Assembly (NCBI RefSeq): GCF_048593235.1
Contig: NC_133620.1
Location: forward strand, 444,693,261 to 444,757,260
DNA: 64,000 nt
Direction: 5' to 3'
Source: Sminthopsis crassicaudata
Taxonomy: Eukaryota
Shown here one piece after another: positions 16,565 to 52,217 of the stretch. The translations under genes and the position numbers were made by a program. The notes below the pieces were generated by a model. The model was given only the letters and a program-made list of their open reading frames with translations, did no database searches and was not told the origin of the DNA. How positions within the stretch are numbered: position 1 is the first letter of the stretch; the number at the start of each line of letters is the position of its first letter.

Positions 16565-16867
16565 CTGAACTCTCTGTCCAATACATATTCGTGGAATCCA
16601 GCAGATGGCTCCAGAATTCAAAGGAACCAAAGTTTAGGTACTAATCAAAGTCTCCATGGGGGACAGGCATCCTTCAAATGTGCAAATAGGACTAATAAAT
16701 ACCCCAAATGCTCTCCCAATAATTTACATAAATTAAATTTCACTGATAAAAATATCTCAGGAAGGCTGGTATCTGGGGAGATTATTTCTGAATGTGGAAT
16801 TCCTAAGCTTGGTCCATTTCCTTTTAAGATTCATTGTTCTAAGCCTCTGAAGCCTTCAATTCAGCTC

Positions 16868-18132
16868 TCAGTCATGTATGTACTTCTGAACCCAGCCATC
16901 ATTTGGGTTGGCACACTTCTCCTGCCCTTTTTTGGTCAGGAAACTGTAGAGTAAGGAAAGAGAATATGAAAGATCAAGGACCTTTCCAACTGGAAATTAA
17001 GGGGAAGTCTCTCTGTTACCCTTTTCTCAACTTTCTGTAGATATCTGGAAGGGACTAAGGAAACACTCTCCCAAGTTCTGAAACCTCCATCAGATCCACA
17101 GAGTCCATCTGTCTCTTTCTAGAGACATCTCCATGAGAGATTTTCTCAGCCTCCTTTCTGACCTCGAATTATTGTTGCTTCCATTCATCCCTCTCCATTG
17201 GAGAGTGTTGTTCACCTCTTGCTCCCAGAAAGACCAAACCTGGACATGGACCACATGGGCCACTGCTCTCCCTTTTATCTCCCTGAGCTGTCTGATGTAG
17301 CCATTTGGCCAAATTGCCAAACAGGTTCATTTTCTCTTTCCATCATCCTACCCGAATCCTCTAAGAAATCTCAATGGGTAGATACTCACACCACAGCTGG
17401 CTGGGAACACAGGCTGCTGGTCTTATAATAGTCTGTCACAAATTTTCTGGGGATCTGCTGTCTGACATGGGAGAAGCAGCAGGCGGTGGGAGTGTTGGAG
17501 CCCAATGTAAAGAAAAGAGTTGCATGAAATCAGTAAGACCATACAGATTCCGTGGGTAAGGTTCTTCATCAGACACACACTGGGGATGTCCTTTCTCATA
17601 TCTCCCCTCTAGTACTAGGCATGGTTCTCTGGGAAGGAGGAAGATGAGACCTGACATTCCCATTCCCAGGTGGGTATCGATGGAGAAAACATAAAAAACT
17701 AGAGATGGATGGGATGTCAAACATCACACTGTTCAGATTCTTTTTTAGAGAGGAAAATGCTTGTCACAAGTAATTTAGTATCAGAGCCAGAACTAGGACC
17801 AAGCTGGATAAAGGCTCAGTCTAGTGATTCTTGCTTGTCTTGATGTTACGTATTAAATAGCAAATCAAGTCAAGAGCATATTCTTAATTACAAGTCTAAA
17901 GGCATTAAAAACCCTATGTGCTCTTGCCCCTGTCATTCAGGGCTCCCCCTCCCCATACTCCCAAATCTCTGTGATCATATCAAGCTAATCTGTCAGCGTT
18001 GTCCCAGAGTATGACTAGAGCCTGGGTACAGACACAGAGGCAGGAGGAAACTCACTTACTTGGTGTAGAGGATGCCAGAGAACTGAAGATCATGACTATG
18101 AGTATGGAAAGGGCAGCCACAGAGACCTTCAT
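16868..18132 (-). pseudogene. CCL4-like gene B1; exons 18060-18132, 17390-17504, 16868-16943; intron-1 acceptor AG>AT
   Basis: Exon frames give [87 protein letters not shown]. The acceptor reads tttacAT|TGGGC at 17505-17506, where gene D has cccAG|TGGGC. It may still make alternative transcripts. Confidence 0.8.
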
Positions 18133-18221
18133 GATCCTGAGAGGCAAAAGGGGCTGTGGGAGCAGAGCACAATCTAAGAGACTCTGCAGATCTCTGTCTC
18201 AGTCTCATGTTTGGACCCTGA

Positions 18222-47971: not shown

Positions 47972-50923
47972 GATCCTGAGAGGAGAGAGGAGCTGGAGGA
48001 GCAGAGCACAGGCTTAGACACACTGTAGCTTTGTGTCTATCTCATTTTTTGGTCCCCTTTTTATAGGATTTTGGGAGTTCATGAAAAGAGGGAACCAACA
48101 GAAAATGAATGGAAATCCTAAGAAAGAGATGATGTCATTGTGAGAAATCAGAAACGAAAATGCAAAGTTGCTACCAGGAGCTGACATTTTCTTCCTCATT
48201 GCAGTTTTACCATTTTATATATGTGTGTGTGGGGGGGGTTGTAACTTACAGCGAGAAGGAATGAAGAGAGAAGGTGTTGAGGAGTGGAGATTGGTGCTCA
48301 GGGGGGTGTGATGAATTTGAGTGGTAGTAGACATGGGCAAAGCTAACTAAGAAGGATAGTAACATTAATCACCAATTGGAAGTTGGCATTCAGAATGAAT
48401 TCTAGATTGTAAGATTACAGATTTAGATTTAGATCTATCAGGGCCCTTAGTGATCATCTACTTTAACTTCTCATTGATTATAGCCCATGTGTCCTCTATG
48501 GCTCTTTATCCAATTACTCAGTTCCATTGATGAACCGCTGAACTTGGCTCCGTATTTTCCTCATCCTTACACCCTCCCTTACCTTATAAAAGCTTGTTTG
48601 GAAGATTCAGATGTTGTTCCCTAATTCCATAAACTGGACCATCAATTAGTTCCTTTCTCTTTGAGATTATCAGTTCAAAATCAATTGAATCGTGCAGATT
48701 TAAGCGATTTTTGCAATAAGGTATAAGCTATGGTGGTTCCATAAAAACAGCTGGTACAAAGCATCTTTCAAAAGTCTGGGACACACTCTCCCAGAAGAAC
48801 ATCGAGAATCCAGGGGGAAATGGGCTTCAGCTTAAAGAGTGTAGAGATGATTAGGCGACTTGATGACTGTGAGTTTTACTTGTGGCAAAGGCATAAATCA
48901 TAGCGTCCAGTTGCTGGAAAGTTTTTTCCATTCATGGAGTAGTTAAAGAGTTCCATTAAGCATGATGAAACTTCTTGGTTTGTGATGGAGACCATGATGA
49001 AATAAGAGCATTGATAGAAAATAATGGAAAAATAAGAAGTCCAAAATCTTCCAGAAGTATTGCACCCATACATGATGTAATCCACCAATATTTGCAAGCT
49101 TGCTCTTCTTCTAGCCACATCGGGGATGTAGTTTAGGAGAAGTAAACACATCTTAATTAAAAATCTCTCCTTAGTCATTTCCTCCTGCACAGCAGAGATA
49201 TTGTTGGAAAGCAGGGAAACAGCCCAATTTCTGGAATTGATCTCTTCTCAACTCCCTTGATAATTCATAGATGATCCCTGGGCTGAGGTTGTTTCCTTGA
49301 CCTATCCTAATGTAATTCCTGTGTAAAGTCATTCTAATTCAAAGGTGAGCTGAGACATTACACCTACACAGGCTAAAGGGATTGTGTGCTTTAGTTTCCC
49401 TCATATAATAAGTTTTATAGATAGGTAGATATAGATGTACACACACACACATGCCTAACAAAAGTATGAGGCTGGATTTAAGCTCAGGTTCTTCTCACTC
49501 TAAGGTTGATATTGTGCCATCTAGTGACCTCACCTAATTTTGCCCTAAAGATTTCAATTAAGCATGATAAACTTTCTTGGCTTCTGAGGAAGGCAGGCTT
49601 ATTCTTTTTATCTCCACTTTATTCATGGTAAAATTGCATCTTGAAGTATATGGTGTGAGATTTGGGTCTAAATCTATTTTCCCAGCAGTTTCAAGGAAGA
49701 GAGTTCTTACCCAATAAGTGATGTCCTTAGATATACTATGGTATGCTCTGCCATTTTTTTCTGCTTCTGTGTGAGAGTTCAGTATAAATGAGAAAGGGGA
49801 AGAACTTATACCATGATAGCAAAATATCTGTGGAAGTTACTGAGTATGCTGATCATTGAGATGACTTATCATGTTATTCAAAAGACTGATGATAAAATTT
49901 GCTTCCCACTTTTGTCTGGCTGTACATAGACTAGAGAGCACTAGAACGAGGCAAACATTGCAGCCACGGCTGATGTCTGAAATGGTTATGTTTGATAATA
50001 CTTATTTGTACATTGTACCTTGTTATTGTGTCTCTGTTTCTCTGTCTCTTTCTATCTCTGTCAATCTCTTCCAACTCTCTGCCTTTGTGTCTCTCTCTTT
50101 TTCTGTCTCTGTGTCTCTCTTTTTCTGTCTCTATCTCTGTCTTTGTCAATCTCTGCATCTGTCTCTGTGCATGTCTCTGTTTGTCTATGTCTCTTTCTGA
50201 CTGTGCGTGTGGTTCTGTTTCTGTCTCTCTGTCTCTGTCTGTCCGTCTGTCTCTGTCTTTCTTTCTCTCTTTTCCAATCTAGTTTTATTTGTCACTCTCT
50301 CTCTTAACCTCCACTTCCCATGTTCCTCACCCTCCCTGAGCTTCTGGGTGATAAGAGAAAAAAGATATGAATATGTTTCTTCAGCCAGTCCAAACACTGA
50401 TTCTGTCTTCACACTGTTTATCCAAAGATTTTTTCTAATTTACCCTCAAGGGTGAGATTGGCTAGTTGCTCAACACTTCTTATATATCACCTTATGATTT
50501 ACTTTATTTTATAAGTATAACTTTTTTGACAATATATATATGCATGGGTAATTTTTTATACCATTATCCCTTGCACTTACTTCTGTTCTGACCTTTTCCT
50601 TTCCTTCCCTCCACCCCTTCCCCTAGACGGCAGGCAGTCTTATACATGTTAGATATGTTATAGTAGATCTTAGATACAATATATGTGTGCAGAACCGAAT
50701 TTCTTGTTGCACAGGAAGAATTGGATTCAGAAGGCAAAAATTCTAATAATATAAATACCCCAAACTGCCATCTCATAATTCATATAAATTAAATTTCATT
50801 GATTAAAAACAACCCAGGAAGGCTGGGGTCTGGGGAGATTGCATCTGAATGTGGAATTCCCTAGCTTGGTCCATTTCCTTTAAAATTCATTGTTCTAAGC
50901 CTCTGAAGCCTTCAATTCAGCTC

Positions 50924-52217
50924 TCAGTCATGGATGTACTTCTGAACCCAGCCATCATTTGGGTTGGCACACTTCTCCTGCCCCTTTTTGGTCAGGAAAC
51001 TGTAGAGTAAGGAAAGAGAATATGAGAGATCAAGGACCTTTCCAACTGGAAATTAAGGGGAAGTCTCTCTGTTACCCTTTCCTCAACTTTCTGTAGATAT
51101 CTGGAAGGGACTAAGGAAACACTCTCCCAAGTTCTGAAACCTCCATCAGACCCACAGAGTCCATCTGTCTCTTTCTAGAGACATCTCCATGAGAGATTTT
51201 CTCAGCCTCCTTTCTGACCTCGAATTATTGTTGCTTCCATTCATCCCTCTCCATTGGAGAGTGTTGTTCACCTCTTGCTCCCAGAAAGACCAAACCTGGA
51301 CATGGACCACATGGGCCACTGCTCTCCCTTTTATCTCCCTGAGCTCTCTGATGTAGCCATTTGGCCAAATTGCCAAAGAGCTTCATTCTCTCTTACTATC
51401 ATCCTACCCTAAATCCTCTAAGAAGCCTCAGTGGGTAGATACTCACACCACAGCTGGCTGGGAACACAGGCTGCTGGTCTTATAATAGTCTGTCACAAAT
51501 TTTCTGGGGATCTGCTGTCTGACATGAGAGAAGCAGCAGGCGGTGGGAGTCTTGGAGCCCAATGTAAAGAAAAGAGTTGCATGAAATCAGTAAGACCATA
51601 CAGTCAACTTGCAGATTCCTTGGGTATTCCCATTATCTCAGGAACAGGTTCTTCATCAGACACACACTGGGGATGTCCTTTCTCATATCTCCCCTCTAGT
51701 ACTAGGCATGGTTCTCTGGGAAGGAGGAAGATGAGACTTGACATTCCCATTCCCAGGTGGGTATCGATGGAGAAAACATAAAAAGCTAGAGATGGATGGG
51801 ATGTCAAACATCACACTGTTCAGATTCTTTTTTAGAGAGGAAAATGCTTGTCACAAGTAATTTAGTGTCAGAGCCAGAACTAGGACCAACCTGGATAAAG
51901 GCTCAGTCTAGTGATTCTTGCTTGTCTTGATGTTACATATTAAATAGCAAATCCTGTCAAGAGCATATTCTTAATTACAAGTCCAAAGGCATAAAATCCT
52001 ATGTGCTCCTGCCCCTATCATTCAGGGTTCCCCCTCCCCACACTCCCAGATCTCGGTGGTTAGACCAGCTAATCTGTTAGGGTTGTCTCCATAGTATGAC
52101 TAGAGCCTGGGTACAGACCCAGAGGCAGCAGGAAACTTACCTATTTGGTGTAGAAGATGCCAGAGAACTGAAGATCATGATTATGAGTATGGAAAGGGCA
52201 GCCACAGAGACCTTCAT
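50924..52217 (-). pseudogene. CCL4-like gene B4; ancestral exon 2 at 51447-51561 with acceptor AG>AT (51562-51563); exon-1 donor shifted 4 nt (exon 1 52141-52217); exon 3 50924-50999; possibly re-framed through a cryptic acceptor
   Basis: The full-length CC form cannot be spliced canonically. The new donor AG|GTAAGT joined to the cryptic AG at 51519-51520 gives a 74-aa in-frame product (see findings). Calling it a pseudogene rather than a truncated gene is uncertain. Confidence 0.6.

What the first reader, a model, noticed from the sequence alone, without database searches (positions are those of the whole stretch)
16790..52000. Young tandem array of an ~11.35 kb two-chemokine cassette, a likely marsupial parallel of the human CCL3L/CCL4L CNV
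About 3.1 head-to-tail copies (B1-C1-B2-C2-B3-C3-B4) with periods of 11328-11380 nt. Each unit has private SNPs and indels, so they are real copies. In humans an independent multi-copy CCL3L-CCL4L segment varies in number between people (established). Finding the same gene family amplified as a two-gene cassette in a marsupial suggests convergent dosage evolution and probable copy-number polymorphism. I cannot confirm from here that it is undescribed.
Basis: partly seen in the sequence, partly recalled or inferred. Interest (0 to 1): 0.78.

Follow-up and report, generated by a model that had tools for sequence, protein, structure and literature searches.

The report
Triplicated chemokine gene block in dunnart
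In the fat-tailed dunnart an 11.3-kb block holding two CCL4-like chemokine genes stands three times in tandem, made by unequal crossing-over, which triples one expressed gene while its partner looks splice-dead: a well-resolved but ordinary immune-gene expansion.

Summary
The window is Sminthopsis crassicaudata. Three head-to-tail units lie at 16695-28020, 28021-39378 and 39379-50750. They are 98.4-98.7% identical. An 853-nt start of a fourth unit follows, then older homology at 80-94% to 55778. The gene order on the minus strand is B1-C1-B2-C2-B3-C3-B4.

- **Ancestral state.** Antechinus and a devil-type assembly have B'-C-B with one C, so the amplification is dunnart-specific.
- **Mechanism.** B2 and B3 are hybrids, with a B4-type 3' part and a B1-type 5' part. 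Both switch in the same interval at exon 2. This is the signature of unequal crossing-over between the B paralogues.
- **B genes.** All four carry a dunnart-only AG>AT change at the intron-1 acceptor. No B RNA was seen.
- **C genes.** A spliced mRNA contig matches the model exactly. The three coding sequences are identical: 0 of 303 sites vary, against 6.7 expected.

In effect one gene is tripled, not a two-gene cassette.

Copy-number variation between animals could not be tested, because only contigs were served and no raw reads. Recent CCL4-related expansions are already published for the Tasmanian devil and the opossum. The scan also has a separate follow-up on seven CCL4-like genes just beyond this window. 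Verdict: a new member of a known kind, of modest interest.

The parts
16695..28020 (.). Unit 1 of the tandem array (11326 nt); holds B1 and C1
   Evidence: Self-BLAST; MAFFT: 98.65% identical to U2 and 98.36% to U3. Its first ~680 nt are only 94.6% identical to the other units.
28021..39378 (.). Unit 2 (11358 nt); holds hybrid B2 and C2
39379..50750 (.). Unit 3 (11372 nt); holds hybrid B3 and C3
50751..51603 (.). Young start of a fourth unit: the 3' part of B4 (exons 3 and 2)
   Evidence: 97-98% identical to U2 and U3, 94.6-97% to U1.
51646..55778 (.). Old paralogous continuation: B4 intron 1, exon 1 and upstream region. Remnant of the ancestral B' copy.
   Evidence: 80-94% identical to unit positions 17559-20800, with one 98% patch at U1 19095-19590.
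16868..18132 (-). B1, CCL4-like gene with an 87-aa conceptual product. Exons 18060-18132, 17390-17504, 16868-16943. Orthologue of the Antechinus B gene.
   Evidence: Exon 2 is closest to human CCL4 in the PDB (1.5e-14). Pfam IL8 hits on both exons. The flank is continuous with the Antechinus B locus.
17505..17506 (-). Intron-1 acceptor of B1 reads AT instead of AG. The same change is at 28833-28834 (B2), 40191-40192 (B3) and 51562-51563 (B4).
   Evidence: The orthologues in Antechinus and the devil-type assembly read AG. DNA contigs of two other samples cover B2's site with no difference there (records 6 and 21).
24004..25262 (-). C1, a 100-aa divergent CC chemokine. Exons 25190-25262, 24500-24614, 24004-24118. 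Intact and transcribed.
   Evidence: 100% match to the NCBI protein 'C-C motif chemokine 4-like [Sminthopsis crassicaudata]'. Pfam IL8 68.4 bits. A spliced 482-nt RNA contig has joints exactly at these exon ends.
28195..29439 (-). B2, hybrid gene: 3' part of B4 type, 5' part of B1 type
28702..28798 (.). Switch interval of hybrid B2 (equals U1 17374-17470). The same interval in B3 is 40060-40156. It lies at the exon 2 / intron 2 border of B.
   Evidence: To the left, 32 of 37 informative sites are B4-type in both B2 and B3. To the right, 135 of 142 (B2) and 138 of 142 (B3) are B1-type up to 19094, then 163 and 164 of 173 from 19591.
35333..36591 (-). C2, coding sequence identical to C1
   Evidence: annotated in NCBI.
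39553..40818 (-). B3, hybrid gene with one private Pro>Leu change
   Evidence: NCBI models an 87-aa product here.
46714..47971 (-). C3, coding sequence identical to C1
50924..52217 (-). B4, the ancestral B' copy. Same dead acceptor, plus 4 extra bases before the intron-1 donor.
   Evidence: NCBI models a 63-aa product. Its 3' part groups with B' of Antechinus and the devil-type assembly.
27765..28020 (.). Very high-copy interspersed repeat at the end of each unit, also about 39125-39378 and 50495-50750. It abuts the 3' end of B2, B3 and B4.
   Evidence: Word depth of 1e5-1e6 in bins 27700-28099 in all DNA runs. Matches at several unrelated places in L001 and L002.
10946..12255 (-). Gene A, an older CC-chemokine paralogue (93 aa, intact splice sites), left of the array
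   Evidence: About 75% identical to the C upstream region.
60319..61616 (-). Gene D, CCL4-like (91 aa, intact), right of the array

Best explanation
This is a real tandem triplication, specific to the dunnart lineage, of an 11.3-kb segment in the CC-chemokine (MIP-1/CCL4-like) cluster of Sminthopsis crassicaudata.

The ancestral dasyurid order was three same-strand genes, B'-C-B. It is still seen in Antechinus flavipes and in a devil-type assembly. Unequal crossing-over took place between the two B paralogues, with the exchange in a 326-nt tract around B exon 2 that is 98.5% identical between them. This duplicated everything between them. It created a hybrid B (3' part from B', 5' part from B) and a second C. 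A second misaligned exchange between units added the third. Gene conversion has since mixed variants among the units. The result is B1-C1-B2-C2-B3-C3-B4.

Only C behaves as a working gene. It has canonical splice sites, a spliced mRNA was seen, and the three coding sequences are identical although the surrounding DNA differs by about 2%. Every B copy carries a dunnart-only AG>AT change at the intron-1 acceptor. That change predates the amplification, and no B RNA was seen. The likely functional effect is therefore a triple dose of one fast-evolving, dasyurid-type chemokine. B is a passenger and the substrate of recombination.

- **Shown:** the array, the hybrids, the single-unit state in two relatives, the acceptor change, the C transcript.
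- **Inferred:** crossing-over as the mechanism, that B is dead, that dose is what selection keeps.
- **Untested:** whether copy number varies between animals.
For: - **Array and its limits:**
- **Species and annotation:** one search gives a 100% match to an NCBI dunnart protein. One search finds three annotated C genes at 444.71-444.75 Mb of CM109184.1.
- **Hybrids:**. Of 37 sites left of U1 17375 where B1 and B4 differ, 32 are B4-type in both B2 and B3. Right of 17700, 135-138 of 142 and then 163-164 of 173 are B1-type. Both hybrids share the same switch interval and mostly the same exceptions.
- **Ancestral state:** searches show B'-C-B with one C in L001 (Antechinus) and L002 (GCA_048593225.1). 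In the tree of the B 3' part, B1 groups with the B of both relatives, and B2, B3 and B4 group with their B'.
- **Acceptor:** one search finds AT in all four dunnart copies. One search finds AG in both relatives. Contigs of two other samples agree with AT.
- **C transcript:**, run X17 record 9 covers 23900-24116, 24498-24614 and 25190-25268, with the intron ends of a minus-strand GT..AG. X17 has no coverage over 28100-29899 (B2).
- **Constraint on C:** one search finds 0 of 303 coding sites variable against 2.2% in the background (expected 6.7, Poisson P 0.0012). The two C introns between the exons hold 12 variable sites.
- **Real variants in other samples:**
- **Age:** unit divergence is 1.3-1.6%, against about 10% to the orthologous DNA.
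Against: - No raw reads were served, so copy number was never measured by depth. No single read or contig was seen to span two units.
- The stretch I laid lies wholly inside the array, so it has no single-copy baseline.
- The orthology split has SH-aLRT support of only 80. The upstream-region tree groups copies by species, so gene conversion blurs the history.
- Shared derived variants among U1-U3 are mosaic (16, 11 and 19), so the order of the two events is not resolved.
- B may not be dead. Its reading frame is open, dN/dS against Antechinus B is 0.24, and NCBI models an 87-aa product for B3.
- The absence of B RNA rests on one run of unknown tissue, kept as contigs.
- C has dN/dS of about 0.9-1.2 between species. 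On its own this could mean relaxed constraint rather than adaptive change.
Confidence: 0.8

Rival explanations
1. Two-gene dosage cassette. Both B and C are working chemokine genes, and the block was amplified and varies in copy number for the dose of both, as with human CCL3L/CCL4L.
For: The B reading frame is open in all copies. B dN/dS is 0.24 against Antechinus and 0.14 between B1 and B4. NCBI models an 87-aa product for B3. In the human unit one CCL4L form also carries an acceptor change and still gives transcripts (PMC3342878).
Against: The AG>AT change at the intron-1 acceptor is in all four copies but not in the orthologues. The next AG downstream lies 34 nt on. It removes the CC motif and shifts the frame in B1-B3 (read from the sequence). 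There was no B contig in the RNA run where C is assembled at word depth about 1170. B coding sites vary at about the background rate (3 of 264, P 0.16). NCBI leaves B1 and B2 uncalled.
Confidence: 0.12
2. Assembly artefact: a single unit, or two haplotypes, wrongly laid out as three tandem copies.
For: Tandem repeats of 11 kb at 98.5% identity are places where assemblers err.
Against: Two haplotypes cannot give three mutually distinct units (93, 56 and 90 private sites). The hybrid structure of B2 and B3 is orderly and the flanks differ on the two sides. Contigs of three other samples carry letters of different units, and in one of them both letters at the same place (X7 at 25808 and 25820). 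Over 23900-25286 the two deep samples give the two-of-three majority letter at all 12 variable sites, as expected from bubble-popping of three versions.
Confidence: 0.05
3. The duplication arose by another route, such as a replication-based template switch or breakage at the high-copy repeat that ends each unit. The B4-like 3' parts of B2 and B3 would then come from later gene conversion rather than from a crossover.
For: A very high-copy repeat sits exactly at the unit ends (27765-28020). Gene conversion is active in the locus: mosaic sharing, a 98% patch at 19095-19590, and species-wise grouping of the upstream regions.
Against: One crossover between B' and B explains four things in a single step: the period, the direct orientation, the hybrid genes, and the same switch interval in both hybrids. 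The repeat is present once per unit beside B'-type sequence, as expected if it was already next to B' before the event. Conversion would have to hit B2 and B3 with the same tract ends.
Confidence: 0.1
4. Neutral segmental duplication. The extra C copies are redundant and drifting, with no selection for dose.
For: C evolves at dN/dS of about 1 between dasyurid species. Tandem duplications in chemokine clusters are frequent in marsupials (PMC4662006).
Against: No coding site of 303 varies among the three copies, while the introns between the exons hold 12 variable sites. This is hard to get by drift or by conversion tracts that would skip the introns.
Confidence: 0.25

Closest known systems
Human and primate CCL3L-CCL4L(-TBC1D3) copy-number-variable segmental duplication on 17q12
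   Same: It is a repeated block with two genes of the MIP-1 (CCL3/CCL4) subgroup, with high identity between copies. One gene type in the block carries an acceptor splice-site change (AG>GG at intron 2 of a CCL4L form), and pseudogene copies occur (PMC3342878; PMC2628739).
   Different: The origin is independent: the dunnart array is lineage-specific and its genes are not one-to-one orthologues of CCL3 or CCL4. The unit is 11.3 kb and strictly tandem, with both genes on one strand; from memory, the human unit is much larger and also holds TBC1D3. All B copies, not just some, have the splice change. Variation in copy number between individuals, the defining trait of the human locus, was not tested here.
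Tasmanian devil CCLD5-CCLD10 expansion and opossum CC-chemokine expansions
   Same: These are recent, lineage-specific, closely linked duplicates related to CCL4 in a dasyurid, with accompanying pseudogenes (Morris et al. 2015, PMC4662006). Many marsupials carry several CCL4-like paralogues.
   Different: The dunnart array involves a different gene type (C, a 100-aa dasyurid-type chemokine) plus B. Here the mechanism and the ancestral state can be read directly from the hybrid genes. I could not tell whether the devil's two C-type proteins (P0003, P0004) form a comparable array.
Classical unequal crossing-over arrays with hybrid junction genes, such as haemoglobin Lepore/anti-Lepore and the red-green opsin array (from general knowledge)
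   Same: Direct paralogues flank a segment. A misaligned exchange duplicates the segment and leaves a hybrid gene with one switch point. Once two units exist, further exchanges change the copy number.
   Different: Here the recombining paralogue (B) seems to be already disabled. The gene that gains dose is the one lying between the paralogues.

Membership tests
CC chemokines (Pfam PF00048, IL8-like), MIP-1/CCL3-CCL4 subgroup | IL8-like domain above Pfam's curated cut-off | tested here: met
   C protein 68.4 bits (cut-off 21.3). B exon 2 scores 33.2 bits and B exon 3 scores 33.9 bits.
CC chemokines (Pfam PF00048, IL8-like), MIP-1/CCL3-CCL4 subgroup | Adjacent CC pair and four conserved cysteines behind a signal peptide | tested here: met
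   Translations. The signal peptide is judged by eye only.
CC chemokines (Pfam PF00048, IL8-like), MIP-1/CCL3-CCL4 subgroup | Three exons joined at the conserved positions by canonical splice sites | tested here: met
   For C, one search shows the sites and one search shows the spliced RNA contig. For B this feature is not met at the intron-1 acceptor (AT).
CC chemokines (Pfam PF00048, IL8-like), MIP-1/CCL3-CCL4 subgroup | Closest solved relatives are CCL4 or CCL3 | tested here: met
   B exon 2: CCL4 at 1.5e-14, then CCL3. C exon 2: CCL14, CCL4 and CCL3 all near 1e-8 to 1e-7, so C is a divergent member.
CC chemokines (Pfam PF00048, IL8-like), MIP-1/CCL3-CCL4 subgroup | One-to-one orthology with human CCL3 or CCL4 | tested here: not met
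   In the tree the C type is a dasyurid clade on a long stem (support 100). B lies in a marsupial group. Eutherian CCL4 and CCL3-like proteins group apart. The deep branches are weak.
Copy-number-variable chemokine segmental duplication of the CCL3L/CCL4L type | Several high-identity copies of a block with two MIP-1-type genes | tested here: met
Copy-number-variable chemokine segmental duplication of the CCL3L/CCL4L type | Copy number differs between individuals | not testable with these tools
   All 24 runs are kept as contigs, and states that depth is no copy number. One weak hint: sample X1 carries U3-private letters at 25808, 25820 and 26372 where X2 carries the majority letters.
Copy-number-variable chemokine segmental duplication of the CCL3L/CCL4L type | More copies give more chemokine | not tested
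   Only one RNA run was laid. The mRNA part has no unit-specific sites, so the copies cannot be told apart.
Copy-number-variable chemokine segmental duplication of the CCL3L/CCL4L type | Common descent with the primate duplication | tested here: not met
   There is one unit in Antechinus and in the devil-type assembly. Unit divergence is only 1.3-1.6%.
Tandem duplication by unequal crossing-over between direct paralogues | Direct paralogues flank the segment in the unduplicated state | tested here: met
   B'-C-B on one strand in L001 and L002.
Tandem duplication by unequal crossing-over between direct paralogues | Junction genes are hybrids of the two paralogues with a single switch point | tested here: met
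   The orthology of the two halves is supported (support 80).

The most novel reading that the evidence does not exclude
C is a dasyurid-only, fast-evolving chemokine. In the dunnart it lost the basic 40s-loop motif that binds glycosaminoglycans. It was then amplified to three identical, all-expressed copies under selection for dose. The array still varies in copy number among wild dunnarts, which would make it a marsupial counterpart of the CCL3L1 dose polymorphism with a measurable immune phenotype.
Probability: 0.25. Interest if true: 0.5.

Novelty: new member of a known kind. Interest (0 to 1): 0.32.

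Why it matters
Chemokine clusters are textbook cases of fast birth-and-death evolution, but the founding event can rarely be read so plainly. Here the ancestral order survives in two relatives, and the junction genes keep the crossover point. This gives a dated, mechanistically explicit example in the dunnart, a species now used as a laboratory marsupial.

It also corrects the gene count. The locus offers three identical copies of one expressed chemokine, not seven working genes.

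For anyone measuring immune responses in dunnarts there are practical consequences. Short reads and qPCR for C will sum over three loci. B-type reads need splice-aware checking. The array is also a natural candidate for copy-number typing.

Tried and rejected
- **Copy number by depth.** All runs found are kept as Logan contigs, so one search gives word depth only. I also chose a stretch inside the array (23900-29899) so as to cover both genes. It therefore has no single-copy flank. The ratios within run X2 (108, 170, 178, 230, 247) tempt a reading as multiples, but two parts with the same expected copy number differ (108 against 170). I do not use them.
- **Order of the two duplications.** I polarised variants with two outgroups. 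Sharing is mosaic (16, 11 and 19), so no order can be given.
- **The locus further upstream in the relatives.** An 18-kb stretch in Antechinus between L006 and L001, and 53 kb in the devil-type assembly between L008 and L002, stay unseen. The second devil C-type protein, P0003, has no gene on record. Extra C copies outside the B'-C-B block cannot be excluded in those species.
- **The loose end of RNA contig record 11.** Its 30 letters occur nowhere in the window with up to 4 mismatches. This is unexplained.
- **Tandem Repeats Finder** sees only small repeats, because its period limit is 500.
- **Other genes in the unit.** No ORF of more than 145 aa is present and nothing looks like another gene.
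- **Literature.** The Colobran 2010 review is not held. The CC table of Nomiyama 2012 is in a supplement that I did not open.
- **Operators' rules.** The N run 57640-57981 was left as it is.

Full report
**1. What is in the sequence**

The window has one N run (57640-57981), which I left alone. A self-comparison gives a single 23.6-kb alignment of 16695-40232 on 28021-51603 at 97.8% identity, and the same block at twice the offset.

Cutting at these offsets and aligning the pieces gives three full units:
- U1, 16695-28020
- U2, 28021-39378
- U3, 39379-50750

Counting substitutions only, they are 98.65% (U1-U2), 98.36% (U1-U3) and 98.69% (U2-U3) identical. The first 853 nt of a fourth unit follow (50751-51603), at 97-98% to U2 and U3. 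Beyond that, 51646-55778 is still homologous to unit positions 17559-20800, but only at 80-94%, with one 98% patch.

Among the three full units 241 aligned sites vary. Of these, 93 are private to U1, 56 to U2 and 90 to U3, and 2 differ in all three. The periods are 11326, 11358 and 11372 nt.

**2. The genes**

All chemokine exons lie on the minus strand. With splice sites placed the order from left to right is A, B1, C1, B2, C2, B3, C3, B4, D.

- **C.** It encodes 100 aa, identical in C1, C2 and C3, with canonical GT..AG at both introns. It matches at 100% an NCBI protein named 'C-C motif chemokine 4-like [Sminthopsis crassicaudata]'. This identifies the genome. The three genes are annotated on chromosome record CM109184.1 of GCA_048593235.1. 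Pfam's chemokine domain is met.
- **B.** It would encode 87 aa. Its exon 2 is closest to human CCL4, then CCL3, among solved structures. C is more divergent, with CCL14, CCL4 and CCL3 about equal.
- **Family tree.** The C type forms a dasyurid clade (support 100) on a long stem. B lies in a marsupial-wide group and is sister to the Antechinus B gene. Neither is a one-to-one orthologue of human CCL3 or CCL4.

**3. B looks disabled, C is expressed**

All four B copies read AT where A, C and D read AG at the intron-1 acceptor. The B orthologues of Antechinus and of a devil-type assembly read AG in an otherwise identical 31-nt context. The change is therefore dunnart-specific.

It lies on the B1-type side of the hybrids and is also in B4, within a 326-nt tract where B1 and B4 are 98.5% alike. 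So it predates the amplification and was probably shared by conversion. DNA contigs of two other samples cover B2's acceptor with no difference there (records 6 and 21).

The next AG downstream is 34 nt on. It removes the CC motif and shifts the frame in B1-B3. B4 in addition has 4 extra bases before its donor.

One RNA run was laid (X17). It holds a 482-nt contig at word depth about 1170 that covers 23900-24116, 24498-24614 and 25190-25268. These are my C exons with both introns removed at GT..AG. The same run has nothing over 28100-29899, which holds all of B2.

Caveats on this point:
- It is one run of unknown tissue, kept as contigs.
- The B reading frame is open, and B has dN/dS of 0.24 against Antechinus.
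- NCBI models an 87-aa product for B3 and a 63-aa product for B4, and calls neither B1 nor B2.

I rate B as probably, not certainly, dead.

**4. How the array arose**

I fetched the orthologous loci through the C proteins of Antechinus flavipes (L001) and of GCA_048593225.1 (L002). The latter's product is identical to a Sarcophilus harrisii protein. Both show the same order on one strand: a partial B' copy, then one C, then an intact B, then the flank that continues the dunnart's left flank across 16695. In both species B' lacks the same 832 nt, from the proximal promoter to the start of exon 2.

In the dunnart, I took the 370 sites of the first 5200 alignment columns where B1 and B4 differ (counts by segment). 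B2 and B3 carry the B4 letter at 32 of 37 sites up to U1 17374. Beyond 17700, B2 and B3 carry the B1 letter at 135 and 138 of 142 sites up to 19094, and at 163 and 164 of 173 sites from 19591. Both hybrids share the same switch interval and mostly the same exceptions.

A tree of the 3' part puts B1 with the B of both relatives, and B2, B3 and B4 with their B' (support 80).

The simplest account is one unequal crossover between B' (now B4) and B (now B1) in the nearly identical tract around exon 2. This duplicated the C-containing segment and left a hybrid B. A second misaligned exchange between units followed. Later gene conversion is evident from three results:
- mosaic sharing of derived variants (16, 11 and 19);
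- the 98% patch at U1 19095-19590;
- species-wise grouping of the B upstream regions.

**5. Age and constraint**

Unit divergence is 1.3-1.6%. The same DNA differs by about 10% from Antechinus and from the devil-type assembly. The units therefore split at roughly one seventh of that species distance, or earlier if conversion has erased differences. That is a few million years if the dasyurid subfamilies split some 15-30 My ago; this date is from memory and was not checked.

No coding site of C varies among the three copies: 0 of 303, with 6.7 expected from the unit-wide rate (P 0.0012). The two introns lying between the exons hold 12 variable sites. Comparing only with these introns, P is about 0.04 (my arithmetic). 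B coding sites vary at about the background rate (3 of 264).

Between species, C changes fast. It is 63-69% identical to its orthologues, with dN/dS of 0.9-1.2 in the mature part. The pattern fits a rapidly evolving ligand whose present form is kept intact in all three copies. This is what selection for dose would give, but it does not prove it.

**6. Is the array real, and does it vary?**

Three mutually distinct units with an orderly hybrid structure cannot come from two haplotypes. Contigs of three independent samples (X1, X2, X7) show, at all 39 checked variant places (27936, inside the high-copy repeat, left out), the letter of another unit at the homologous site. Over 23900-25286 the two deep samples carry the two-of-three majority letter at all 12 variable sites. 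This is what bubble-popping of three versions would give. The low-coverage sample shows a U3-private deletion, and both letters at 25808 and 25820.

This is good but indirect support. No raw reads were on offer, so neither depth-based copy number nor reads spanning two units could be checked, and copy-number variation remains untested. One weak hint is that X1 and X2 differ in which unit's letters win at 25808, 25820 and 26372.

**7. Comparison with what is known**

The human unit holds CCL3L, CCL4L and TBC1D3. It stands three times in the reference and varies in number in humans and other primates. One CCL4L form carries an AG>GG acceptor change that gives aberrant transcripts (PMC3342878; PMC2628739). 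The dunnart array resembles it in gene family, in being a repeated two-gene block, and even in a splice-site lesion. But it arose independently, is ten-fold smaller by my recollection of the human unit, and its polymorphism is unknown.

Closer in taxon, Morris et al. 2015 (PMC4662006) described a devil-specific recent expansion, CCLD5-10. Its members are 93-98% identical, closely linked and related to CCL4, with two pseudogenes. They cite opossum expansions as well. One search shows many CCL4-like paralogues in most marsupial genomes. The scan's own notes report seven further CCL4-like genes just beyond this window.

I found no paper on dunnart chemokines.

**8. Verdict**

The array is real and its mechanism can be read. 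It is a new member of a known kind. It does not hold for the two-gene dose, and the polymorphism is untested.

Noticed in passing
window 24088-24117 (and the same place in C2 and C3): The dunnart C protein has NNENWE where Antechinus and the devil type have basic TKMKRE and TKRNRS (the 40s loop). At DNA level a shared ATGA sits 2 nt nearer the exon start in the dunnart, and 2 extra nt follow it. This fits a compensated frameshift over about six codons.
   Followed up: partly
window 25239-25462: RNA run X17 has a 254-nt contig (word depth 668) that covers the start of C exon 1 and 200 nt upstream with 5 mismatches. It then runs into 30 letters found nowhere in the window. It may come from a related gene elsewhere or from an upstream exon.
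   Followed up: partly
window 25265-26258: In the same RNA run a low-depth joint goes from 25265 to 25875 (skips 609, with ends of a minus-strand GT..AG). Small contigs lie at 25897-26258. This suggests an occasional upstream first exon of C.
   Followed up: no
L001 3783-3791 and L002 5167-5175: The B' copies of Antechinus and the devil-type assembly lack the same 832 nt, from the proximal promoter through exon 1 and intron 1 to the first 42 nt of exon 2. B' was therefore already a pseudogene in their common ancestor, while the dunnart B4 keeps exon 1.
   Followed up: partly
proteins P0003 and P0004: The Tasmanian devil has two C-type proteins that are clearly different from each other and are sisters in the tree. 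The C gene was therefore also duplicated, earlier and separately, on the devil side. The place of the second gene could not be fetched.
   Followed up: partly
window 29444-29758: DNA contigs of all three samples show a joint that skips 313 nt just upstream of B2's start codon. The short side is only 26 nt. It may be an indel variant of one B copy or a chance lay.
   Followed up: no
window 60319-61616: Gene D is an intact 91-aa CCL4-like gene, 91% identical to a wombat protein. Its exact product did not come back from the protein collection: the best dunnart hit is 93% identical and 90 aa long. It may be unannotated or modelled differently.
   Followed up: no
window 57640-57981: A 342-nt N run lies between the old B4 upstream region and gene D. 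It was left as it is.
   Followed up: no
window 16925-16943 (the end of the B coding sequence in each copy): Dunnart B ends four codons earlier than Antechinus B (87 against 91 aa), through a stop where Antechinus has a Pro codon.
   Followed up: no
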